A stretch of DNA of 64,000 bases, taken from assembly GCF_031769215.1 (NCBI RefSeq), contig NW_026781977.1, positions 434,001 to 498,000 on the forward strand, read 5' to 3'. The DNA is from Ylistrum balloti. Taxonomy: Eukaryota. The notes below the pieces were generated by a model. The model was not told the origin of the DNA, made no database searches, and was given only the letters and a program-made list of their open reading frames with translations. Positions 10,991 through 61,290 of the stretch are shown here, piece by piece. How positions within the stretch are numbered: the first letter of the stretch is position 1; each line of letters opens with the position of its first letter. The translations under genes were made by a program, and so were the position numbers.

Positions 10991-12738
10991 AGTGTCATTT
11001 ATCGTTTGACTCTACTGTATTCTAAAGTTGTATCAAAAAGAGTGTTTTGTAAAATATTAATAAAATCATTTCACAGATTTATCTGGATATGTAAGATGTA
11101 TGCATTATTTATATAAAGTTTTTACACTGAAAACCTATTTTTATGTTGTAGATGTAATTGTACTTAACGTCAACAACATATTATTCTTTACGACAGAATT
11201 CTCTTTGATGTTAACGTCGTTTTGAACGTACTTCGCTTAAACAAACTTGTCTCAAAAAGTACTTTGTATCAGGAATATGCATTTTTAGATACCCAAGATA
11301 AATCACAAAAAAGAGATAATTTTTGATTGATTCGTACTTCATGGCACGTATAGCTCTAACTTTTATTAAGATCTATCGTAAATATCTAAATGATAATAAA
11401 CCTGTTTTGATATAGGTGCACCAATAAAGTTACTCGGAAAGTCTGATTGCTTCTATAATTCAGAAGGCTTCTGCTTATGCAAACCATCTGAACTTAACGA
11501 TTTTGTTGTAATTAAACCTATTCCATGTACGTTATTACAAGCCTATTCCGAGATTGTTGCTGTGAATGCCTTTGGCGGTTTAAATACGTTCATTTATCAT
11601 TTGACAGAGTTCGAATATAATTATACACCTGCAAACACTGAATATAATGGGATTTTCTTGAAAGTATATTAGTTTTGCAATTGAATTATTTTTTCATCAT
11701 TAGAAAGAGTTAGCGCTTAAATGATTTCATAAGGACACTAGTGACAGCAAATGTTGTTTTTGTTGTCAAAAATAATGAAAAAGTCTACCTGATTCTTTTC
11801 ACATTATTTTTATTTTTTACCATTTTGAAACTTTTGTAACATGTTAATCACATTATATTCCATTTGCTAAAGTAGTTACTTTATTAGAACTTCAAAGTAG
11901 TCGAGTGGGAACGTAACATAATTGAGATGCTCTGATAAAATTTGTGGAAAAGTGACAATCACATTGTCCGAGCTTTAGCGATCCCTATCTTATTGCCACT
12001 AATGCACTCACATCCGCTGGGACAAATATACATCAGGTGTGCATGTATATCACCATTAACTACATCAGCATGGGTGCATATAGATATTCCATACATAGAA
12101 CAGGACAAGCCATCAAGTTCCTATCAGAGATATTTTCGATAGAAGCTCAGCTGTTTTAATAGTTGATTTAATTACTTCCTGTTTCTTGTTGATATTGCTG
12201 TTGTGATGACTGCATCCACACTTGATAGGGATTCAGTTTAGAAAACCATACTTCAAATAAGTCTTCTGGGCATCCTTTATGCTTTTCTCTTAAGCTAACA
12301 ACGCTGAGAAAATCGAGATATTTTCAGCTGGGACCAAAGAAATGGATGATTGGTTCTATCATGCATGATAAGATGTTTACACGCACAACCTTGTACTTAG
12401 GCAAAAACTTTTACCTATTTCAACTATATCATTTTATCATTCTGATATATACTGAGCATTTTCTGCACATTCGCTAAAACATTGAAAATTGTCGTGAAAA
12501 AGAAAAGCAACAACGCAATTAACACAACAATATTATGGTTAGGAACAACGCCAGTGGGAGGATGTAGATAAATCTCACTGTTAAAGCCTACAACTGTATA
12601 TTATATATTGGCGACTGGCACCAATCATATAAAAAGAAAACCAAAAATAACACAAACTGCACAGTGCTTCATACATATATTTTAACCTTATTTTTGCTGC
12701 TGTTGATTTCCCACAGGCTTCAGAATTTAAGGCACCAA

Positions 12739-14149: not shown

Positions 14150-14330
14150 TTGAACATTCGATATCACATTGTGTTACACATAAGGAAACATTGTCGCCCG
14201 CTGACTGATAAACTATAACACAGGGGTTCATTTGATTTAGTTGATGAATATTATGGAAAAGTTTTACGGTCGTCATAGTATTTCATAGAGAAATCATATA
14301 TTTCTTTGTGCAATGTATAGCCGGAAGTGT
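14150..14330 (+). mobile_element. PLE thumb fragment
   Basis: LTDKL.TQG...LMNIMEKFYGRHS, homologous to 34080-34190. Confidence 0.7.
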
Positions 14331-16128
14331 TTGACATTGTTTAGCTTGTCTGTTTGTTTCTTTTCTATATACATTGTTCTCGAACGTTTTTGTTGAAAGA
14401 GACCCGTTTTGAATGAGGCTTATTGAATTTCAATCTGAATTATAATTATGTTCACGTGTTGCTTTCATGTTGCGCCTTTGTTTATGCATATACTATAGTT
14501 TTCGAAGCAAATACATCTTTAATGTAAGTTCAAACTTGGAACCCTGAGTTTACAGTCATGTATTGTACGTCATAATAACTACTTCTCTCCTACGCTCTTC
14601 GCAAAATATCCTGCCAAAATTGAGTTTCAAAAAGTAGGTCCTTATCATCACTGACAAGTCCTAGAAAACGGAAACTGTTTTATGATGAAACCCAAGTCAT
14701 TATTTCGCTCTACCGCATCTAATTAAAATTTGTATTGAAAAGTGTGTGTAGTTTGTACAATCTTTTCCACAACAAAACAATTTTTCCTTCCTATCGATAA
14801 AATGTTCACTGTTTCGAGTGTTATAAGAGCATCAGATCCGAATGAGCATCACTTTACTAGTTTTTAATTCACAAAAATAAAACAAAAACCTCTAATTTCG
14901 TAACATCCTGCAAAAATCAATGCTTCCCGAAGGGTGCGGAAGGGTTTCCGGATTCACCGTTCCGCCATTCTGCTTCTACATTATTGGGGTTATAGAGCCA
15001 ATACTCTCCTAAACATCGCGTTTGATTGATAGAAAACGAACCATTGTACAAGTTTGATATTTTAAAAGAAAATTGGACGGGACGAAAACAGACTTTTAAC
15101 ATCTAAAGCTAGATTCATGCTCAAATTAGAAGCGCTATTTACAGAAATCTTAAGACTCTTTATAAAACTTACTGTTGAAACGATGCAAAGTTCAATTACC
15201 AGCGAGGAAATAACATTTTATATCAAATTAAAAACCTATTTTCAATGCAATTTATTTCCTCGAGTTGCATTTTATTGATTTCTTTGCAGAAGAATCAACA
15301 CAGTATCTCACAGATTCTTATCAAATGTTTTACTCAAGTTACTTAATGCTTAATCAAATTGATTAAAAATACATACATTTCATTCCGTGAGAGTCTACTT
15401 GTAGATAACGTGCAACAATGCTTTACAAGATGCCTCCTTTAACATACGCCTGTTCTTGTGGTTTGTAAACAATCCGCGGCTGCTGTCAATTACTGTAAAC
15501 AAACTTATATTCGCGAATTGTCGTTCGAAACATGTCCTTCTGTCTTTGATTCATTCACCTGCCAAGCATGCAATCTGGTACCAGAAATAGAGAAAGTACG
15601 TCCTTATTAGAATGCCTGGTAGCTCTATTGTTTCTTTACCTTATTCTCATTTGGGAACGTGAAATTACAAATCAAGCTAGATTTGCATGACGCTTGTCGT
15701 TATTGAATCAGAAGATGCCAATCTTTCCTAAACATCTTGTCTTATCCCCCTTTTACTTTTTTTCAGAGGTCTCCGCGAACATTTGTCTTATTTTCATATT
15801 TTGCCCTAGCTTCAACGAGTTAAAGTTGAAAATAAGATCCTGTGGACATGTCGCATTTCCTTTCTGGTTTTGTTAACATACAGACGTACATGTGCATTTA
15901 TAATTGTGTCAACATTCTGTCAAGTTGTACTGACAGGACAGGACAAATATTCAAAATAATAATAGTAAAAACAAAAGAAAACAATCATAATTAAAGACCA
16001 TCTTCATATAAACAGTGGGGAAAAAACCAAGACAATCTATCAGATGTCAAGTCACTTTATCACTGTAAGACCGTAGAATTACGTTTGCCTTCATTGGAAT
16101 CTATTTAATCAAAACAACATCGGATATG

Positions 16129-17064: not shown

Positions 17065-17220
17065 AAACAATATACAGAGATTGGAATTAACGAATTGGCA
17101 ATACAGATGTTAGGAAACAATATACAGAGATTGGAATTAACGAATTGGCAATACAGATGTTAGGAAACAATATATAGAGAGTGAGGTAAACGTATTGACA
17201 ATACAAATGTTATGAAACAA
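17065..17220. repeat. 50-bp tandem repeat, 2 exact copies plus 1 diverged
   Basis: aaacaatatacagagattggaattaacgaattggcaatacagatgttagg at 17065 and 17115, diverged copy at 17165. Confidence 0.9.
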
Positions 17221-20699: not shown

Positions 20700-20830
20700 A
20701 TATAAACTCAAGATCGATAAAACGAGGGCAAACATTAACAAAATAAAGAATTACAGACACAAGGAGAAGTAGGCGTTCCTCAAGGGTTAGCGTCTTCTGC
20801 TCACTCGACGACAGTAATGAAAATATTGAT
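20700..20830 (-). mobile_element. PLE 3'-tail copy (short)
   Basis: gttcctcaagggttagcgtcttctgctcactcgacgac, preceded by a degenerate end motif. Confidence 0.55.
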
Positions 20831-22313: not shown

Positions 22314-23055
22314 TCTGATACATAACACGGAATGATAGACAAATCGAAACTATTTACCATCGGGTAACTCCTATAAAACTACACTCACTTCTTTAAGATT
22401 TCTGTCGTGGATAGCACATTTTTTTCTCATTTTTCGAACGTGATGAAAATACTGGTAGACAGTATGGAAATGCTAGGACGAGATTCCTGTGGTACTTGAC
22501 ATTATATTATCACAGCAGTAAATGTGTGATGTCTATTCTATCAACACAATACTGTTTGAGTAAGATTACTGGACACAAAAATAATATTGGTCAACTAATC
22601 AATTCAATAGCAACATCAGTACTCCAGAAATACGATGTCTTTGCATAAACAAGCACAAATTCCATTATATACTAGAGTCTCGGGAATAGTCAGTGAAAAA
22701 AGACGTAGGCCCTGATAAGGTGTTTATATCTGTCTTAATATTTGTTATTTTGTGGAATTAAGTTTATTATTTATCAATTATCTGGTGATTCTTTGACAGG
22801 CTCTCATAAAACATTATAAAAGTCGATCTACTATTGATCGACCTACCACGTCATTTATAGATTTTCGTTCATGACTCAAAAAAGAGAGATTTGTGATGCT
22901 TGAAAGGCTTCCCTTTAACACTTATGAATGAATGTCAAGGTCGTCCACTCGATCCCATAACAATCAAAAGATTACAGCAACGAGAACACAATTACCCATT
23001 ATACATATGGAAAAAACAAGGCAAATTTCAGCAGCTGTACACAATCATAATCCGA

Positions 23056-23296
23056 ACTCGAATTCCATAACACTAGGGGAAATATGAACAAGAGAACTAT
23101 TTACACGGAAACAAAAAAGTACAAGAAGAATAAGACCGAGTGTTCCGGAAGGGTTAGCATCTCCTACTTTATTGACGGCAGTTTTCATGTAAATCTTGTA
23201 AGTACAAGTAACCCAAGTAAGTAATGTCACATCCTCGAATAAGAACAAGGTATGCAACGACGAATCTAACAAGGAAACTAACAAACATCAGACACC
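23056..23296 (-). mobile_element. PLE 3'-tail copy
   Basis: gaagaataagaccgagtgttccggaagggttagcatctcctactttattgacggca plus downstream gtaatgtcacat..gaataagaacaaggtat, shared with the 51.3, 54.9, 27.9 and 59.3 kb copies. Confidence 0.75.
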
Positions 23297-24189
23297 TCAA
23301 GCTTCAGTGATCTTTGACCTTTGATTACCTTTTCATTTTCTTGTACTTGACAGAAAATACTTAGCAGGTGTTTGAAACGTTGAATTTCACGAGTTGGTAT
23401 CCTCGTTTATTACTAGAGGTGTAATTGATGTTCCTTCTTTCAGTTTTAAGATCTTACTATATATTATCTCTCTGATGCTGAAACGCTAATTATTGCTGTG
23501 ATCAATCGCAATATATCTATCAGTTTTACTCTCACTTGTACCACTCCACTATTTATCAGCTACCAGTGTCTTCTTTAAATAATTTGTGTTGTATCTTTGA
23601 TAAGGTAATTAACAATTAAGGTTTATTTTCATTCAAGATTTAGGGATAATTAATGCCAAAAATACCAGATTTACATCCGGCGGAAGCCAGAAAACAGCAA
23701 TAAGGTCCTACAGCTCAGTGCAATTAATTTACTCTGGGAATTAAATTTCGTTTTCAATCATTTCATTTGCATGCAAGCATTATCCATTTCATAATTACTG
23801 TTCCTTACGATTTGAAACCCTTATCGTTCTCTTTATTTTAGCTCCACTGCAAGGATCGGAAACATCATTGATGTGCATAAACGAAAAACCCTTATTACAT
23901 GTATAAGACTCCAGTAATACTTTATATATTATCACTACTACAATTATAATTGCAGTGTTGCGGTAACATTTACCCGTCGTTTTCCTAATCCGTTTGTATG
24001 TCTGAAGAAATGTAATAACTTTTTATAAAGAAATTGACATCAAAGACTTACATCACACCTGTTATTACTATCATTATACAATGAACGGCTCATCAAAGTA
24101 GAGAAGGACATAAAGACAACCTGTAAATAAAGATACGCTATATATAGACGTAGGCCAAACTATCAATAAAAGAAAGAATTACCCGATGA

Positions 24190-24290
24190 CTCCTATAAAA
24201 AGCAAGGAGAATAAAGCCAGATGTTCCGAAAGAGTATGCGTCTTTTGTTTCATTGACGACACCCACCATGTATACAACAACGAAATCAAG
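24190..24290 (-). mobile_element. PLE 3'-tail copy (short)
   Basis: ggagaataaagccagatgttccgaaagagtatgcgtcttttgtttcattgacgacaccc. Confidence 0.6.
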
Positions 24291-24435: not shown

Positions 24436-24728
24436 CACTAGACTGATATCCTAGCTCCAGCTAGATATAGACACAATAAACTGATGCTATACCCTAGCTC
24501 TAACTAGATATAGGTACACAAGACTGATGTGATATCCAAACTCCAGCTAGATATAGACACGATACACTGATGCTAAATCCTAGTTCTAGCTAGATACTGG
24601 TCACAAGACTGATGTGATATCCTGATTCTAACTAGATATACGTACACTAGACCGAAGTGATATCTCAGCTCTAACTAGATATAGGTACAATAGGTACACA
24701 AGGCTGACGTGATATCCTAGTTTTAGAT
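24436..24728. repeat. ~43-bp diverged tandem repeat, ~7 units
   Basis: Consensus gactgatgtgatatcctagctctaactagatataggtacacaa, with alternating variants. Confidence 0.85.
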
Positions 24729-49017: not shown

Positions 49018-51283
49018 TATTTGCCACAGAGTGTTTATTTTTCTTCCATTGGTAATTGGTCTAATTTTCTTATGTTAAGACATAGACAAGCAAGAAAATA
49101 ACGCATTCAAACAAGACGTAACTGACACCTACACTATAGAAAATCAATAAAACTACATCATGCAGCTCCTGTGTAATATGTTTTAGCCACAATTAAGAGA
49201 CTTGTCATGTCTGCTTTATGAGTTGCGTGCAGTACCGAAACATTTTATCAACCAACCATTTACCTGAAAATATGCTTCAAATTATCAAACTACCTTTGAC
49301 CCCTTGACGATGTACATTCATGATAAAGAAATACTAGTTCATATTGTTAGTGATTTCATGGTAAGATATGCATCTGAAAAAATCGACTGTCCCCTAATTT
49401 CATGATTTACCAGGACGGAGACGACTTAATCTCTCAACTCTCAATAGCAAATTAGAATTAAGGACCATCGACAGAACACATTCCAGTGACGCCTCAATCA
49501 TCATTGATTTTCCCATTAGTACTGAGCTAATGTCCAGGTGCTCCCCTCAACCGTGTTCTTCCTGTGACCACTATATTCAGATATGCCTCATTATTGCATC
49601 AGCTGCAATGCTGTCAGCTAACTGCCTCTTATTTCTCGTCAATGAGTTTGGTACATCTCGGATTATCAGTTCAAATAATCTTTATGGCCTGACCTCTATA
49701 TATTCAGCATTAACTTACGGTCAGTTTTGTATACAAAACAACGTTACTTGTGACTAATTATACATATATACAACTGACCTATATTTTGGGCCAACCTCTT
49801 AAGTTATATATAATAATTAATACAGCAAAATAGGTCACATTTTAAATGGAACGTGTTAATACTAATTTTTACTGTAAGGAGCAACCATGTATAAGTTCTG
49901 TCTGAAAACCGTAGTTCTCAACAGAAAATCGTTCTTAAATGAAATATACATGATTCTTATTCGGTAGCTCATCTGGAATCACACGTTCGAACGACAATAG
50001 TACATATCTGTCGCCACGCCCTGCCAAGCATTGTGCGCCTGTTTTCAGGAATTTTAATACTCAAAGTCGTTGGGGTAGGATGTCATTATCATGTTTCGCA
50101 CGCTATCCTTCTATACATGGACGCTCATCAAGAGCAACAATTGTGACATTAATTTACAGCTCGAGTCAAAGACAGATAATTTCACACCCATTTAATGTAT
50201 CACTTGTGATTTAAGTCAAGAATTCGAATACGGATGTGTGATATATTATAGTGCAAAGCAAGAGATATTTGTGAACATGTTTTTCTCTTGAAAAAAACCC
50301 GTAGATCTCAAATTATTCTGAATGGAAAGTACTATTACTCTAAATAGAAATAAAATTGGTCAGCAAATATGTTTTGGATTTTCCAAATCCAAATTCTTGG
50401 CACTGTATAGTCCAAAATGGCCTTTCTGTATTTTATCATCTTGATACAGTTAAATCGGTATTGCTTAATAAACACGTGTCAATATCAACAAGAAAATACC
50501 GACATGTCATCAAAATATTGATTCAAAGTCAGATTCAGTGAATCGAGAACAAAATCTGATAAAATAAAAAAAAATTACAAGAATAAGAACACAAGGTGTA
50601 ATATTTCATTTGTATACATCGAAACATATTGAGCAATATTAACAACATGCTTACTACTGTTGTCCCCAACAACCATGACATTGCTGAAACATTTCTGGAG
50701 AGTGTGATATTTACGTTCTACGTAATGATCAGGGTTTGTGACCATTATGCTTTCCTTTTCTTTACAGCTATATTCCTGTTTTCGCTAAGATACAATAAAT
50801 AGGATCGAAGTATTAGCTACACATTTCTCAAATGGAATATCAATAACGCCTTCATGCTCTTGTTTTCAAAGTTTGATTTCTTAAAAACGTTGAACGACGA
50901 TAATCGTATCCATATTAAGAAAAAAAAACATACAGCACGGAAGTCTACTTGACTTGTCCACAGTCTCCGTTAAGATATTCCCAAACTCTTTCATTGCATT
51001 TTCTGCGCTCAGTATTTGCAGTCTCTAACGGGATTAGAGGAAAACCAAGAAGTTAGTAACACCCAAGAAAATAAAGGCTCACGAAAATAAAATCCACAAT
51101 CATGCTTATCGCTTAGTGAATAGTTTTTTTTATTTCATTTTTTTCAAACTGTAAGCAAAGGTTATAATTTTAATATACTTCCTCTGCAATTTTACAATTT
51201 GGCTCATATTTCAACCTTCAAAAATCTAACGCATTTAAGAAACAACAAGTAAATGCCAACAAATGAATATAGTCGTAATCTCG

Positions 51284-51660
51284 AAAACTGAAATTCAATA
51301 GAACTAGGACAAAGTCTGAACAAAAGAAAGATTTACACGGAGACTCATGAAACAAAACAAGAAGAATAAGACCAGGTGTTCAGGAAGAGTAAGCATCTTC
51401 TGTTTCAACGACGACACCCGTCATGAAAATTTTGGTCAATCAAAGTAAGTTATGGCACTTTCTCAAATGAGAACAAGGTGTATAACAACGGCACCAACAT
51501 GCAAACTAACAAGCAACAAACAAGTCCAGCATTATATCGTACAAATAAATTGAACATTTCTCAATAATATCACTATGACGACCGTTAGACTTCTCAATAA
51601 TTTTCATCAACTAGCATCTTTTGAAATCCTGTGTTACGAATTTGTACTTCTATTGACGAA
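51284..51660 (-). mobile_element. PLE 3' fragment (thumb end plus tail)
   Basis: The minus strand reads KFVTQDF...LMKIIEKSNGRHSDIIEK, then the tail motif and end motif matching 34090-34422. Confidence 0.8.
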
Positions 51661-55090: not shown

Positions 55091-56024
55091 TGGAGCTTCA
55101 TACTGCACAGGAAAACAAATAGTCTTAATGAGATTAATTTACAGACTCGTTAATATACTTTTTACCCCTGACTAAAAGATAAGTACACGCTATAATGAAT
55201 TGTAACATAATGAGAATAGAAATAATTGCTGTTTATAGAGATTAGCCGGGTTTCAGGTTTTAGATAATAGAATTAGGTAGATCTGGTAGTAGATAAATGA
55301 CGTCATCATTGACCTTGATTGATGGATGATATGACCAGACTGGGAAACAACATAACAGACCATCTTTAAGACACTCTCGTGTCGAAGAAACATTTCCAGA
55401 GTAGATCGGTTTTGTTGAGGTCACGAACTGGAACGAACATTTTAGCACTTCATTGCCAATTATGAAACGAATTGTTTGTCCATTGATTTGAAATATCAAT
55501 GTTTTTTTTCTTTTTAGCTATTTTCTGCTTTAACAGGGATTTTATTTGGCATGTTTTGTCCCAAGGTAATACGAGATTGAAAACGCCGGTATGCCGTTTT
55601 TTTCCCACTACAATTTAGTTTATTAGCCCAGAGATGTCCATTATGTTAAACCAATCATTAAGAAAGATGTGTTTTTATCTGTTGGGTTTTTAGTGGGTTT
55701 TAGTTGATTTTCAACTACGGTTGCAGCGGATGTGAAGGACGATAGATTTCAGTATTACCATCTGGTCATTGACATGTCAACTAGCAGTATCAATTGACAT
55801 TTGTATTGGATAATATCCATGTATGTTCTCTTTAATGATTATCGTGCATAAAATCCTATTTAGACAAAAGTGCCGTTCTTGAGATTAAATTAAAGACAAT
55901 TTGTAATATTGACCTTAAAGTATATCTACAATTGTTGAATGAATGCCCATCACATACGATACACACTGTCTTCATATTTTTAATTGCGAGGAGTAAGTTT
56001 ATATTAACACAGGTATTTTCATTA

Positions 56025-56385
56025 TTTTAATGGTTAAAAATAAGTCAAATGAAACAGGTAATCTTCATAACTTTAATGGTCAAAAATAAGCATATTGATA
56101 CATATTATCGTCATAATTTTAATTTCCAAACAAAATTTAAATGATATAGGTCACCTTCATCAATTTAATGGCCAAAATACATATGCATTAATACAGATTA
56201 TCTTACATTATCCTAATAATGCAGGTCATCTTCATAATTTTGATGGACAAAAATATATCTGTATTGATACAAATTATTTTAATATTTTTAATGGCCAAGA
56301 ATAAGTCTAATGATACAGGCAATTTTCATAATGTTAATGACTAAGAAGTATGTATTGTTAAAGCTTATTTTCATAATTGTGATGC
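56025..56385. repeat. ~46-bp highly diverged tandem repeat
   Basis: Recurring aatgg(c/t)caaaaataag...tgatacaggtaatcttcataatttt. Confidence 0.6.
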
Positions 56386-57312: not shown

Positions 57313-57972
57313 CTGAACATTCGTATAAGCCTTTCTCCTATTGTCATACTGGACACTCTTCCTCGTATAAGCCTTTCTCATGATGTCTTTCTGGACACCT
57401 CCTCGTATAACGTTTGCTCATGATGTCTTACTGGACACCTCATCGTATAACGTTTGCTCATGATGTCTTTCTGGACACCTCCTCGTATAACGTTTGCTCA
57501 TGATGTCTTTCTGGACACCTCCTCGTATAACGTTTGCTCATGATGTCTTTCTGGACACCTCCTCGTATAACGTTTGCTCATGATGTCTTTCTGGACACCT
57601 CCTCGTATAACCTTTGCTCTTGATGTCTTTCTGGACACCTCCTCGTATAACCTTTGCTCTTGATGTCTTTCTGGACACCTCCTCGTATAACGTTTGCTCT
57701 TGATGTCTTTCTGGACACCTCCTCGTATAACGTTTGCTCATGATGTCTTTCTTGACATGTCTTTCTGGACACCTCCTCGTATAACGTTTGCTCATGATGT
57801 CTTTCTTGACACCTCCTCGTATAACCTTTGCTCTTGATGTTTTTCTGGACACCTCCTCGTATAACCTTTGCTCTTGATGTCTTTCTGGACACCTCCTCGT
57901 ATAACCTTTGCTCTTGATGTCTTTCTGGACACCTCCTCGTATAACCTTTGCTCTTGATGTCTTACTTGACAC
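57313..57972. repeat. 40-bp minisatellite, ~16 units
   Basis: tgatgtctttctggacacctcctcgtataacgtttgctca and a cctttgctct variant. Confidence 0.95.
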
Positions 57973-58679
57973 TTATTATATGTAATTCAGCATTCAATAC
58001 AACATGTAATACGCGAAAAGAAAGAAAAATCTAACTTTTATTAACTAAGGAGATCATAAATTGATGTACGTCAAGATGTCTGTTATCTCTTGTCAAATAT
58101 TTAGTGTTATCGGTTCAACTTTGTCGATCTCTTATATGCACAGAGTAGTTGTATTTTCGTAACAATATGCTTATTCAATTATCATCAACAATCTAGCTTT
58201 AATTTGAGTCTAGGTTATCCTTTACTGCCACATAGGGACACATGATCAAGTTATATCAATTATGCCTTTGTCTGTGTTTGCCAAAGTTTATCAATTGACA
58301 TGGTACAAAAATCGCTTCTGTATGATACTCAAGAGAAAAACTTGTCTGGTTTTAGTTCGTTGGAAATGTCTTGTGTTTTAATACGAATTGCTCCTTTATG
58401 AACCCTCCGCATTGTTAAAGGTTAATAGCCTTTGTACCACCGTACTTAATTTTGTCGGCGCTTCGTACTGTTATTTAGGAGAACATAGTCACTGTAACCT
58501 GCATGGCACGTTTTAATTAATTCAAAATGTGGCACGGATCAGAATCTACACATGTACTTTACGCTGTTAATTACCATATATATGATTGGATTATAGGGCT
58601 AGTGCAACTCCCCATCTATAATTGAACTTTCCATTGGATTTCCCTCACTCGCCTTCTAGGTTTCAACTTCAGGTCATTC

Positions 58680-58722
58680 GCTTCACTGATGAGTCCTTAG
58701 GGACGAAACAGCTGTATGATGC
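58680..58722 (+). ncRNA. Minimal type I hammerhead ribozyme with intact core
   Basis: gcttca-CTGATGA-gtcc[ttag]ggac-GAAA-c[agct]g-TA|tgatgc: canonical CUGAUGA/GAAA core, 4-bp stem II, short stem III forming the palindrome ACAGCTGT, GUA cleavage triplet, stem I with 5 of 6 pairs. Confidence 0.8.
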
Positions 58723-58983
58723 AGTTTCGTTAATTATTTGCCTCTATTGTATCTAACTCTAAAGTTGTATTGCTGTTCACTTATGTGTCTTTTGCAAAAG
58801 CTTTGCAGCGTATTTCTCCTTTCTTGTAGGCCGTTTAGATCGAAAAAACACACTTACTCATCACAAACACTTACATAACTTTAAATAACCATAGTTGTTG
58901 ATAAAACGTTAACCAGTAAAACAAACAAAGCACTTATTTGTGTCTGTAGATAGTGCAAAACAAAACGCAACTATCACTTTCAA

Positions 58984-59143
58984 GAGCCGCGTTGACATTT
59001 GGTTAATGCGTCCGATATCTTTATCAATAACCCTCAACCTCTGGGTCGCAGATTCGAGGCCTACCTTGGACAGTCGTCAGGAACTGGCCGCAGGTTCGTA
59101 TTTTTTCTCCGAGAATTCCACCACCCAAAACTGGCACATCCTT
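58984..59143 (+). mobile_element. Second copy of the same SINE family
   Basis: gagccgcgttgacatttggttaatgcgtccgatatctttatca..gattcgaggcc (B box)..gccgcaggttcgtattttttctccgagaattccacc aligns by eye with 48764-48925. Confidence 0.7.
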
Positions 59144-59202
59144 CAGTGATATGAGGAAGAGAAAGCGAAAGAAAATACCAACATGGCACCATGATCATAA
59201 TC

Positions 59203-59570
59203 TTAAATTCAATAAAACTAAGTTTTTTTGTTTTTTTTTTCATAAATGACTCCCGAAAAAGTACAAAGAGAATATCATCATGTGTTCCGGACGAATACGC
59301 GTCTTCTGCTTTATTGACGACACCCGCCAGGTAAATCTTGGTCAATCCCAGTAAGTAATGACACATTCTCAAATGAAAACAGGGTATACATCAATGGGAC
59401 CAACAGACAAAATAACGAGCATCAAACACGTTCAACCCTATGTCGCAAAAAGAAATTAGATATTTTTTTCAAATGAGATCACTATGACGACGGTAAAACT
59501 TCTTGATCATTTTCATCACCCTGTATTTTTTGAAACCCTGTGTTTGTCGGTCAGTTGGCGATTTCGAAAA
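59203..59570 (-). mobile_element. PLE 3' fragment (thumb end plus tail)
   Basis: The minus strand reads QGFKKYRVMKMIKKFYRRHSDLI. The + strand carries the tail motif gttccggacgaatacgcgtcttctgctttattgacgacaccc and the end motif aaattcaataaaacta. Confidence 0.8.
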
Positions 59571-59846
59571 CCGTGTTAATGGGAGCAGGACTTTGAATAT
59601 CAAATTATTTGACACATGTAAACATCTTAAGTTGGGAGCACAGGTTTGTTGCTATCCAGGAATGGGAAATATATGAACATATATCTTGGTGGAAAGTTGT
59701 CCATGTTGCTCTCTTAGCCTCTTATGAAAACACAAATAAGTAGGCCAACATTTGGGAAAAGTGTCATAGGTATGCCTATAATTTGTTAGAAGATCATAAC
59801 ACCAATCTCATCGAAGACAAAACAACGGCTTATGAAACTGACTATC

Positions 59847-60516
59847 AGAGACTGGTTGTTCTAGCTAGAAACAGGTGCCAGGACAAGGTTGTTCTTGCTA
59901 GAGACAGGCGCGGAGACAAGGTTGTTCATGCTATAGAGAAAAGGTGCCGAGACAAGGTTGTTCTTGCCAGAGACAGGCGCGGAGGCAAAGATGTTCATGC
60001 TATAGAGAAAAGGTGCCGAGACAAGGTTGTTCTTGATAGAGACAGGCGCGGAGGCAAAGATGTTCATGCTATAGAGAAAAGGTGCCGAGACAAGGTTGTT
60101 CTTGCCAGAGACAGGCGCGGAGACAAGGTTGTTCATGCTATAGAGAAAAGGTGCCGAGACAAGGTTGTTCTTGCTAAAGAGAAAAGGTGCCGAGACAAGA
60201 TTCATCCTGCTATAGTAACAGTAACAGGCGCGGAGACCAGGTTAATCCTCCGATAGAGACAGGTGCCGAGACCAGGTTGATCTTGTTATAGAGACAGGTG
60301 CCGAGACCAGGTTGATCTTGCTATAGAGACAGGCGCCAAGACCAGGTTGATCTTGCTATAGAGACAGGTGCCGAGACCAGGTTGATCTTGTTATAGAGAC
60401 AGGCGCCAAGACCAGGTTGACCTTACTATAGAGACAGGCGCCGAGACCAAGTTAATCTTCCGATAGAGACAGGTGCCGAGACCAGGTTGATCTTACTATA
60501 GAGACAGGTCCCGAGA
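59847..60516. repeat. 34/35-bp minisatellite, ~19 units, two sub-arrays
   Basis: The left part is a 69-bp dimer (gagaaaaggtgccgagacaaggttgttcttgcca + gagacaggcgcggagacaaggttgttcatgctata). The right part is the 35-bp unit gagacaggtgccgagaccaggttgatcttgctata. Confidence 0.95.
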
Positions 60517-60559
60517 AAAGGGTCTACTTGCTCTTCTGTCGATGGTTACAAGTGATGGA

Positions 60560-61290
60560 CAATTTGATCTTCGATAAATTTAGCCTCTTATTAAAACAAA
60601 AACAAGTCAGCCAACATTGGGCTACAATTAGTTCCAATAGCTATTTTTCTAGTCTGTGGGAAGATATCTAAACTGGACAAATATGTTGTCGACCAGAAAC
60701 TCGATCATTTGCATAATTTCGTCCACCGGAAATGATTTGGACATATATTTCACGAAATACACTTCAATATAGTTCAGGGTGGAAGAATCATGTGCTCTAA
60801 CATGACGAAAGGTTTTAAGAAGAGGATGTTGAAGATATATTGATCAAAAGCTCTTTGGAGTTTGCTAAGAATGGTAATTAGTAGTTTTGACAAAGGTTTA
60901 GCTGAGCACCTAGACAAGCCCGCAATAAAATGTAGTTTATATTGATTCTTGTTAAGTTCAGAAATCCGATATAAACAAGGGAGGCCCGTATCCTTATCAT
61001 TGATAGGCAATCTAAATGATAGTTATACCGAAACAAACATGATAAGCCAGTGTTATTTCTTTGGAAACATTGCATAATGTTTATGTGGGGTTTCCTTAAT
61101 TATCAAACGATCCGAGCTCTTTTTGTATACATGGAATGTCTGTAGATGATGACAAAATTATTGGACGCCTTATCGGCTTGCACAACAACATACATGTCAT
61201 GTAGTTTTATTAGTGTGGAAAGAGGAATGGTGACATTTTTTTTTCATTTTTGTTGTCAAGCTGCAAATTATCTTAGAAATGATGGGCCGA
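60560..61290 (-). mobile_element. Decayed Penelope-like element: N-terminal half of RT
   Basis: Ordered motifs across stops and frameshifts: LHDMYVVVQADKASNNFVII, KELG..GNPT, LPCLYRISELNKNQYKLHFIAGLSRCSAKPLSKLL (ORF 60774..61010), MIEFLVDNIFVQF and IGTNCSPMLADLFLF. Confidence 0.9.

What the first reader, a model, noticed from the sequence alone, without database searches (positions are those of the whole stretch)
59800..60535. Minisatellite expansion visible in two states: ~19 units here versus ~2 units in a paralog at 33503-33640
Seen: read on the minus strand, the array is entered through cagaagagcaagtagacccttttctcgg and exits through agtttcataag..gttgttttgtcttcgatgagattggtg. The locus at 33503-33640 (+) has both flanks but only about two monomers. 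The entry flank is a variant of the PLE tail motif, and both loci abut PLE RT sequence near the ADLFL motif. Inference: a PLE-tail subfamily carries a seed that expands locally into a VNTR, giving before and after states in one window.
Basis: partly seen in the sequence, partly recalled or inferred. Interest (0 to 1): 0.7.

Follow-up and report, generated by a model that had tools for sequence, protein, structure and literature searches.

The report
LINE-derived minisatellite beside Naiad retroelement fragments
The 19-unit tandem array and its 2-unit sister copy are real, but the repeat unit comes from the coding tail of an ordinary LINE retrotransposon rather than from a Penelope-like element tail, so this is a clear but ordinary example of a minisatellite born inside a dead transposon.

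Summary
The array is 19 units of 33-41 bp at 59866-60521. A homologous 2-unit locus lies at 33504-33603, with both flanks significantly similar. Contigs from four public runs bridge both array borders.

The interpretation does not hold. On the window's + strand, the unit, the 'entry flank' and the first part of the 'exit flank' are a fragment of a LINE ORF2 C-terminus, just downstream of the RNase H domain. This is the region with the ...VKP.IGEW...RDEVVLARLRMGH motif. A profile built only from LINE copies elsewhere in the genome hits the 2-unit locus (E 1.9e-8) and every part of the array. In all 12 aligned LINE copies that keep this segment, plus 3 more found by pattern search, the segment occurs once. 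That gives a 1 -> 2 -> 19 series.

The entry flank's likeness to the Naiad 3' coding motif is not above chance. There is no 'subfamily': the entry flank occurs exactly twice in the 648-Mb genome, and both copies are in this window.

The two loci descend from one composite ancestor, a 5'-truncated Naiad-type PLE inserted antisense into a LINE. They share the junction zone, the unit order and 9 derived substitutions. How the second copy arose is open, and length polymorphism was not testable.

This is a known kind of event: a transposon-derived minisatellite started by slippage. An earlier report of this scan on other DNA of this genome described PLE tails turned into satellites.

The parts
59866..60521 (+). 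Minisatellite array of 19 units.
   Evidence: TRF gives period 35 x 18.7 and period 69 x 9.5. Unit parse. There are 12 nhmmer hits of a LINE profile, all on profile positions about 136-185 and all on the + strand.
60236..60515 (+). Type A block: units 1-8, 35 bp each, mean pairwise identity 89%. It is the closest relative of paralog unit P1 (82%).
59883..60194 (+). Type B block: units 10-18, alternating 36 and 33 bp as a 69-bp higher-order repeat. Several units are identical (u11=u17, u13=u15, u12=u16). The 33-bp subtype is the closest relative of paralog unit P2 (70-73%).
60511..60556 (+). This is the LINE ORF2 segment that follows the unit in every LINE copy (the ...VVLARLRMGH codons). The boundary with Naiad copy A lies somewhere in 60546-60575.
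   Evidence: MAFFT alignments with LINE copies. nhmmer hit 60494-60545 reaches profile position 198. Ungapped 35-mer identity is 24/35 to the LINE consensus.
59822..59865 (+). Degenerate last unit plus the LINE 'VKP.IGEW' remnant. The LINE/Naiad junction lies in about 59818-59840 and is ambiguous over about 14-20 nt.
   Evidence: read directly from the sequence
59169..59820 (-). Naiad-type PLE copy B. It is 5'-truncated near RT residue 455-460 of P0020 and has an internal deletion after the SYEA motif. Its 3' end is at 59169.
   Evidence: Translation. Alignment to the family consensus. Family homology ends at 59169 in many pairwise hits.
60557..61243 (-). Naiad-type PLE copy A. It covers RT residues about 221-505 of P0020, carries the DKA motif, and is cut at its 3' side where the LINE fragment begins.
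   Evidence: tblastn with P0020, translation, family alignment
33504..33603 (-). Short-state homologue: entry-flank homologue 33504-33531, unit P1 33527-33561, unit P2 33562-33592, then 'agtttcataag'. The strand given is LINE sense.
   Evidence: nhmmer 33550-33418, E 1.9e-8
33280..33628 (-). 3' part of the LINE copy that hosts the short state. It continues well past the entry flank.
   Evidence: blastn with LINE copies, MAFFT, nhmmer
34460..34640 (-). Upstream part (end of RNase H) of the same LINE copy, on the far side of the Naiad insertion.
   Evidence: 17 LINE copies match 34478-34585, E down to 1e-16; alignment
33604..34431 (+). Naiad-type PLE copy nested antisense in that LINE. It has the same 5' truncation zone as copy B, lacks the GIPMGTNCAPLLA codons, and ends at 34431.

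Best explanation
The array is a minisatellite born inside a dead LINE (non-LTR retrotransposon) copy. The unit is a 35-nt piece of the LINE's ORF2, a few dozen codons downstream of the RNase H domain. Canonical LINE copies carry it once.

In one old LINE copy, a 5'-truncated Naiad-type Penelope-like element had inserted antisense just upstream of this piece. There the piece was duplicated once. The likely cause is replication slippage or unequal exchange between short direct repeats (TCC..GC, or TCCTTGC in some copies) that bracket it. This step is inferred.

A roughly 1-kb block (LINE fragment with two units, plus the Naiad copy up to its 3' end) was then copied to a second place 27 kb away in inverted orientation. 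The mode of copying is unresolved. The original locus (33.5 kb) kept two units. At the new locus (60 kb) each of the two unit types was amplified separately by further slippage or unequal exchange. This gave an 8-unit type A block and a 9-unit type B block with a 69-bp higher-order period, 19 units in all.

The sequence has no sign of function. It is a neutral by-product of repeat instability.
For: LINE origin:
- Pattern searches found single-unit homologues in other contexts (C411, C162, C462).
- Aligned, they show that the unit, the entry flank and further sequence are one continuous homology.
- The C462 copy has the end of an RNase H domain just upstream.
- The family has at least 823 candidates in the genome.
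- One copy's 194-aa ORF scores RNase_H 37.3 bits against a cut-off of 25.8 and ends directly before this segment.
- The consensus of 20 copies translates to a typical LINE ORF2 C-terminus.
- An nhmmer profile of 16 LINE copies hits the window only at 33550-33418 (E 1.9e-8) and 12 times inside the array. All hits fall on the same profile positions and on the strand opposite to the Naiad fragments.

One unit in canonical copies: alignment. No other tandem of this segment exists in the genome.

The paralog is a LINE split by a Naiad insertion: LINE homology lies on both sides, at 34478-34585 and 33314-33547, collinear and on the same strand.

Common ancestry of the two loci:
- They share the LINE/Naiad junction zone and 'agtttcataag'.
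- The entry 35-mer is 30/35 identical between the loci but only 23-24/35 to the LINE consensus, with 9 shared derived substitutions.
- The entry flank is unique to these two loci genome-wide.
- Unit order is shared: P1 is nearest to type A and P2 nearest to type B.

Expansion after the split: within-type identity is 89-97%, with identical units, against 68-79% between the loci.

The slippage-between-short-repeats model for minisatellite birth in transposons is established in the literature (Haber and Louis model as reviewed in PMC6947457).
Against: - The exact LINE/Naiad junction is ambiguous over about 14-20 nt. That stretch aligns about equally well to the LINE and to the Naiad 'EFL(I/V)DN' codons.
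- Individual array units score only E 3e-4 to 0.03 against the LINE profile. The case rests on their number, common register and strand, and on the stronger hit at the paralog.
- P1-to-A (82%) versus P1-to-B (78%) is a small difference.
- A tree of the Naiad 3' regions is a star and does not place copy B with the paralog's Naiad copy, so common descent is not confirmed from the PLE part.
- The flanking-direct-repeat step is inferred from present-day LINE copies, not seen in the ancestor.
- The array length rests on one assembly.
Confidence: 0.8

Rival explanations
1. One reading: a subfamily of PLE tails carries a repeat seed that expands locally. The entry flank would be a variant of the PLE tail motif.
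For: The entry flank shares the 8-mer GCAGAAGA, and loosely a CTTT(T)CTC..GG stretch, with the conserved Naiad 3' coding motif. Both loci are next to Naiad RT sequence.
Against: The similarity is not above shuffled controls (p 0.10-0.81). The flank and unit align continuously with LINE ORF2 on the other strand. Only two copies exist in 648 Mb. In the paralog the 'flank' is interior to a LINE copy that continues for more than 200 bp.
Confidence: 0.03
2. Contraction rather than expansion: the common ancestor already had a long array, and the 33.5-kb locus shrank to two units.
For: Minisatellites both gain and lose units, and there is no outgroup for the composite ancestor. The two types A and B are both represented in the short locus.
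Against: Units within each block are far more alike (up to 100%) than the loci are to each other, so most present units are young. Canonical LINE copies have one unit, so the low number is the ancestral direction. P1 and P2 are as diverged as the flanks, as expected for old, unturned-over units.
Confidence: 0.1
3. The two loci are independent. Two Naiad copies inserted separately into the same site of two different LINE copies, which then formed tandems independently.
For: The Naiad 3' parts of the two loci are no closer to each other than to other family members (star tree; 68% vs 76-83% to other copies). PLE endonucleases can have target preferences (PMC8557442).
Against: There are nine shared derived substitutions in the 35-nt entry segment. 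Both loci share the same truncation zone and the same 'agtttcataag' junction. They share the unit order. No other LINE copy in the genome carries either a tandem or this flank variant. The loci are 27 kb apart in a 648-Mb genome.
Confidence: 0.03
4. The long array is an assembly artefact, a mis-assembled or over-extended repeat.
For: No independent contig spans it. Short-read contigs break inside it.
Against: Both borders, and interior pieces of both unit types, are recovered in contigs of three to four independent runs with few differences. The internal structure (two blocks, a transitional unit, higher-order repeats) is not what a collapsed or duplicated assembly error usually gives.
Confidence: 0.04

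Closest known systems
Transposon-derived minisatellites started by slippage between short flanking direct repeats (Haber and Louis model; Alu-, B1-, MaLR- and LTR-derived minisatellites listed in the review PMC6947457)
   Same: A segment present once in the canonical element is bracketed by a short direct repeat. It is found duplicated in one copy and amplified into an array in another, and the array develops higher-order periodicity.
   Different: The source here is the ORF2 coding tail of an invertebrate RNase H-bearing LINE, not a SINE or LTR element. The one-, two- and many-unit states are all preserved in one genome.
Naiad-type Penelope-like elements (Craig et al. 2021, PMC8557442)
   Same: The RT fragments flanking the array carry the Naiad 'DKA' version of the DKG motif. 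They are heavily 5'-truncated, very abundant, lie in complex same-strand arrangements and show no hammerhead ribozyme on their own strand.
   Different: The minisatellite is not part of the element or of its 30-40-bp 'tail' extension. It lies in the LINE sequence into which the Naiad copy inserted.
PLE tails turned into satellites
   Same: Same genome and same general theme of tandem repeats growing at decayed retroelement ends.
   Different: There the repeat unit was said to derive from the PLE hammerhead-bearing tail itself. Here the unit is LINE-derived and the PLE is only a neighbour. I did not re-test that report.
5' transduction and template-switch chimeras of LINE-1
   Same: The block copied to the second locus consists of upstream flank plus the element up to its exact 3' end. 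It is preceded by another same-strand, 3'-cut fragment of the same family. That is the pattern expected from a read-in transcript plus a template jump.
   Different: The new copy lies only 27 kb from the source, which favours a DNA-level local duplication. No target-site duplication could be identified, and PLEs are not known to do this.

Membership tests
Minisatellite | Head-to-tail array of units of about 10-100 bp | tested here: met
   TRF period 35, 18.7 copies, score 660; period 69, 9.5 copies; 19 parsed units
VNTR (length-polymorphic minisatellite) | Different unit numbers among individuals at the same locus | tested here: inconclusive
   Only short-read contigs were available and none spans the array. 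There are small differences inside it (60139-60148, 60232). One run (X5, organism B) has no contig over 59736-60204.
Transposon-derived tandem repeat | Unit homologous to an internal segment that canonical copies of the element carry once | tested here: met
   Alignment with LINE copies: the 12 aligned copies that keep the segment carry it once, as do 3 more found by pattern search. nhmmer profile hits. No other tandem in the genome.
Non-LTR retrotransposon (LINE) with RNase H, as source of the unit | RNase H domain and ORF2 C-terminal region adjacent to the segment | tested here: met
   RNase_H 37.3 bits against cut-off 25.8 in L092:1453-2034. Sub-threshold in L072. The consensus translation has the ...RLRMGHTYLTH... 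C-terminal pattern that I recognise from LINE ORF2s (the recognition is from my own knowledge).
Non-LTR retrotransposon (LINE) with RNase H, as source of the unit | Reverse transcriptase and AP endonuclease domains in the same element | not tested
   An Exo_endo_phos_2 ORF exists in locus L080, but I did not show that it belongs to the same element.
Naiad-type Penelope-like element (for the flanking RT fragments) | DKG motif modified to DKA (PMC8557442) | tested here: met
   'ADKASNN' in copy A (61243-61106) and in the full-length relative P0020; criterion taken
Naiad-type Penelope-like element (for the flanking RT fragments) | Reverse transcriptase domain | tested here: inconclusive
   RVT_1 matches relatives only at E 1e-4 to 4e-3, below Pfam's cut-off. 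The RT motifs GIPMG..., FRYIDD are visible by eye.
Naiad-type Penelope-like element (for the flanking RT fragments) | N-terminal GIY-YIG endonuclease and CxC motif | not tested
   All copies seen are 5'-truncated or broken. The database relatives found are gene-model chimeras without that region.
Naiad-type Penelope-like element (for the flanking RT fragments) | No canonical hammerhead ribozyme | tested here: met
   Rfam finds nothing on the element strand. The only hammerhead-like match (58670-58714, 27 bits, below the 48.5-bit gathering score) is on the other strand, outside the element.
PLE 'tail' (30-40-bp extension at an insertion end, or the conserved Naiad 3' motif) | The entry flank is a significant variant of the PLE 3' motif, or sits at a PLE insertion end | tested here: not met
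   Alignment scores are within shuffles. The flank is interior to a LINE copy in the paralog.

The most novel reading that the evidence does not exclude
The second locus was made by RNA rather than by DNA duplication. In this reading, a read-in transcript started in the antisense LINE flank and ended at the Naiad 3' end. The Naiad machinery retrotransposed it (5' transduction), with a template jump onto another Naiad RNA producing copy A. If true, this would be the first indication that Penelope-like elements transduce flanking DNA and so seed tandem repeats at new sites.
Probability: 0.2. Interest if true: 0.45.

Novelty: new member of a known kind. Interest (0 to 1): 0.22.

Why it matters
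This corrects the annotation: the repeat is LINE-derived, not a property of PLE tails. No 'expanding PLE-tail subfamily' should be looked for in this genome.

Its modest value is as a teaching-grade example. The one-unit state (all 12 aligned LINE copies that keep the segment, plus 3 found by pattern search, out of a family of at least 823 candidates), the two-unit state and the 19-unit state of the same 35-nt segment all survive in one genome. The short direct repeats that probably started the process are still visible.

The unresolved origin of the second copy could bear on how PLEs build their complex insertions, but the evidence here is thin.

Tried and rejected
- Global MAFFT of the two loci was useless because of the 600-bp length difference, so I switched to BLASTN.
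- I first read the entry flank as the continuation of Naiad copy A's RT codons ('KKLA..FN'). The alignment to 25 family copies showed that RT homology stops where the flank begins.
- I then tested the flank and the units against the Naiad 3' 'KAEDAY' motif. The result was not significant.
- Pfam on short stop-free pieces of the window's RT remnants gave nothing. Family identity came from a representative search plus the DKA motif.
- Rfam at gathering thresholds found nothing in the window.
- I looked for the remainder of copy A, or for LINE sequence, beyond the Naiad 3' end at the array locus. None was found.
- A tree of the Naiad 3' regions, meant to test whether copy B and the paralog's copy are sisters, was an uninformative star.
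- ARAGORN found no tRNA in the SINE-like stretch I thought I saw at about 58985-59165.
- Genotyping the array length failed because only short-read contigs were available.

Full report
OBSERVATION. Tandem Repeats Finder reports an array at 59866-60521 with period 35 (18.7 copies) and also period 69 (9.5 copies). Units 1-8 are 35 bp (type A). Unit 9 is a 41-bp transitional unit. Units 10-18 alternate 36 and 33 bp, forming a 69-bp higher-order repeat (type B). Unit 19 is degenerate. The 28-nt entry flank recurs at 33504-33531 with 26/28 identity and nowhere else in the window. BLASTN shows that the loci are collinear through entry flank, units, exit flank and about 400 bp downstream, with E-values from 2e-16 to 8e-41. 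The short locus has two units, 33527-33561 and 33562-33592. Contigs from four public runs in two studies bridge both borders of the array (59683-59952 and 60374-60899), so the structure is not private to this assembly. None spans it.

WHAT FLANKS IT. On the minus strand the array lies between two decayed fragments of one very abundant reverse-transcriptase family. There are at least 281 candidates in the 648-Mb genome, and all copies examined are broken.
- Copy A (about 61243-60557) covers residues about 221-505 of the full-length relative P0020.
- Copy B (59820-59169) starts near residue 455-460 and runs to the family's 3' end, with an internal deletion.
- The family carries 'ADKASNN'. This is the DKA form of the PLE DKG motif that Craig et al. 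give as diagnostic for Naiad-type Penelope-like elements (PMC8557442).
- It shows the heavy 5' truncation described there, and no hammerhead ribozyme on its strand.
So 'PLE RT near ADLFL' is right. Pfam RVT_1 is only sub-threshold, and the N-terminal GIY-YIG domain could not be examined.

THE TURN. The entry flank at up to 3 mismatches occurs exactly twice in the whole genome, both times in this window. DNA searches with the flanks and units also returned only these two loci. Pattern searches with the unit consensus found three more places where a unit-like sequence occurs once in another context: C411, C162 and C462. Aligning these with the short locus showed one continuous homology covering the unit, the entry flank and sequence beyond it. 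Read on the opposite strand, that homology is coding. In the C462 copy the end of an RNase H domain lies just upstream. The family has at least 823 candidates. A 194-aa ORF of another copy scores RNase_H at 37.3 bits, above Pfam's cut-off of 25.8, and ends directly before this segment. The consensus of 20 copies translates into a typical LINE ORF2 C-terminus, with the motifs ...VKPVIGEW... and ...RDEVVLARLRMGHTYLTH....

I built an nhmmer profile only from 16 LINE copies elsewhere in the genome. It hits the window at 33550-33418 on the minus strand (E 1.9e-8) and twelve times inside the array on the plus strand. All array hits fall on the same profile positions (about 136-185), and the last hit runs on into the entry flank. 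Hence three pieces are LINE ORF2 fragments antisense to the Naiad fragments: the unit, the entry flank, and the 'agtttcataag' part of the exit flank. The rest of the exit flank is Naiad RT coding sequence, the (E)FL(I/V)DNIFV..FQQ.IGIPMG codons.

THE TAIL-MOTIF CLAIM. The entry flank shares the 8-mer GCAGAAGA with the conserved Naiad 3' coding motif ('KAEDAY'). Local alignment of the flank plus units against seven such tails is no better than shuffles, with p from 0.10 to 0.81. That claim is not supported.

ARCHITECTURE OF THE SHORT LOCUS. LINE copies match the window collinearly on the minus strand at three places: 34585-34478 (end of RNase H, E down to 1e-16), 33547-33476 (unit region) and 33396-33314. 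A multiple alignment shows the LINE continuing to at least 33280. Between these parts lies a Naiad copy on the plus strand (about 33604/33628 to 34431). So the short locus is a LINE copy carrying a nested, antisense, 5'-truncated Naiad insertion. About 48-85 nt of LINE are missing at the insertion site. An unassigned 46 nt (34432-34477) follows the Naiad 3' end. Relative to canonical LINE copies, the short locus has exactly one extra copy of the 35-nt segment.

ARCHITECTURE OF THE LONG LOCUS. Here LINE sequence exists only between about 59822 and about 60556. No LINE homology is found beyond the Naiad 3' end at 59169 or beyond copy A. Copy A follows the Naiad consensus up to the 'KDLAKS' codons and then gives way to the LINE fragment. 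The boundary is ambiguous within 60546-60575.

COMMON DESCENT. The loci share four things:
- the LINE/Naiad junction zone, including an identical 'agtttcataag';
- the Naiad truncation point;
- the order of unit types, with P1 nearest to type A (82%) and P2 nearest to the 33-bp type B units and unit 19 (70-73%);
- nine derived substitutions in the 35-nt entry segment, which is 30/35 identical between the loci but only 23-24/35 identical to the LINE consensus.
No other LINE copy carries this variant or any tandem of the segment. A tree of the Naiad 3' regions is a star and neither supports nor rejects sisterhood. That result is expected if the copy was made soon after the insertion, during the family's burst.

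MECHANISM.
Shown:
- Canonical copies have one unit, one locus has two, and its sister has 19.
- Units within blocks are 89-100% identical, while the loci differ by 21-32%. Most amplification therefore post-dates the split.
Inferred:
- The first duplication arose by slippage or unequal exchange between the short direct repeats that bracket the segment in LINE copies. These read TCC..GC in the consensus and TCCTTGC in copies such as L075 and L059. This follows the Haber-Louis model as reviewed in PMC6947457.
- Later growth came from repeated slippage or unequal sister-chromatid exchange. This would explain the 69- and 70-bp higher-order periods and the mosaic order of identical units.

HOW THE SECOND COPY AROSE is unresolved.
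- A local DNA duplication or rearrangement (my estimate about 0.5) is favoured by the 27-kb distance, which is very unlikely for a random retrotransposition in 648 Mb.
- An RNA route (about 0.2-0.3) would be 5' transduction from a read-in transcript ending at the Naiad 3' end, with a template jump generating copy A. It is suggested by the copied block ending at the Naiad 3' terminus, and by copy A being same-strand and cut at its 3' side.
- I could find neither a target-site duplication nor shared flanking DNA.

COMPARISON AND NOVELTY. Minisatellites and satellites born from internal parts of transposons are well documented (PMC6947457, PMC9659126). An earlier report of this scan described PLE tails turned into satellites elsewhere in this genome (s1-240642; not re-tested). 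The present case is a new member of that known kind, with an unusually complete 1-2-19 series. It is not a PLE-tail phenomenon. Interest is low to modest.

LIMITS.
- The junction positions are uncertain by 15-30 nt.
- The LINE clade was not named.
- The RT and endonuclease domains of that LINE were not examined.
- Array length and polymorphism rest on one assembly.
- In run X5 (organism B) no contig covers 59736-60204, and its contig departs from the reference after 59712. This may reflect a different structure there, or only a gap in the contigs.

Noticed in passing
window 58670-58714 (+): Hammerhead type III-like match (Rfam RF00008, 27.1 bits, below the 48.5-bit gathering score, E 0.008). 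It is on the strand opposite to Naiad copy B and about 450 bp beyond its 3' end. It probably belongs to another PLE or retrozyme-type repeat, because 58680-58770 also matches 10947-11033.
   Followed up: partly
window about 58985-59165 (+): This stretch looked to me like a tRNA-derived SINE head (D-arm and T-arm-like boxes), directly abutting the Naiad 3' end at 59169. ARAGORN finds no tRNA there, so this remains an impression only.
   Followed up: partly
window 34432-34477: 46 nt lie between the end of Naiad family homology and the resumption of the host LINE. The size and position fit the 30-40-bp 'tail' extension described for PLE insertions (PMC8557442), but this was not tested.
   Followed up: no
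window 57342-57972; 5620-6131; 1428-1922; 24444-24693; 17065-17220; 56009-56177: Six further minisatellite arrays (periods 40/120, 31/62, 20, 43/86, 50 and 46 bp). The window is rich in such arrays. The 40-bp array lies only 1.2 kb from the Naiad/LINE block.
   Followed up: no
window 59713-60204, run X5 (organism B): The X5 contig covering 59401-59712 continues for 22 letters unlike the reference, and no X5 contig covers 59736-60204 (the type B half). X1-X3 do cover these. This is possibly a structural difference in the second organism, or possibly only a contig gap.
   Followed up: no
window 9286-9394, 14216-14381, 20790-20800, 23010-23302, 24186-24272, 51239-51636: Further decayed 3' fragments of the same Naiad-type family. 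These make at least eight copies in 64 kb, and a star-like tree indicates one old burst.
   Followed up: partly
window 59783-60256 (+) and 59861-60205 (-): Open frames of 157 and 114 aa run through the array on both strands. They are a by-product of the repeat, since stop-free units are reiterated. The 35-bp period is not a multiple of three.
   Followed up: no
proteins P0014, P0017, P0020, P0091: Public gene models fuse this Naiad RT with MAM, Mab-21, mariner-like or SNF transporter pieces. These are likely annotation chimeras caused by the element's abundance in invertebrate genomes.
   Followed up: no
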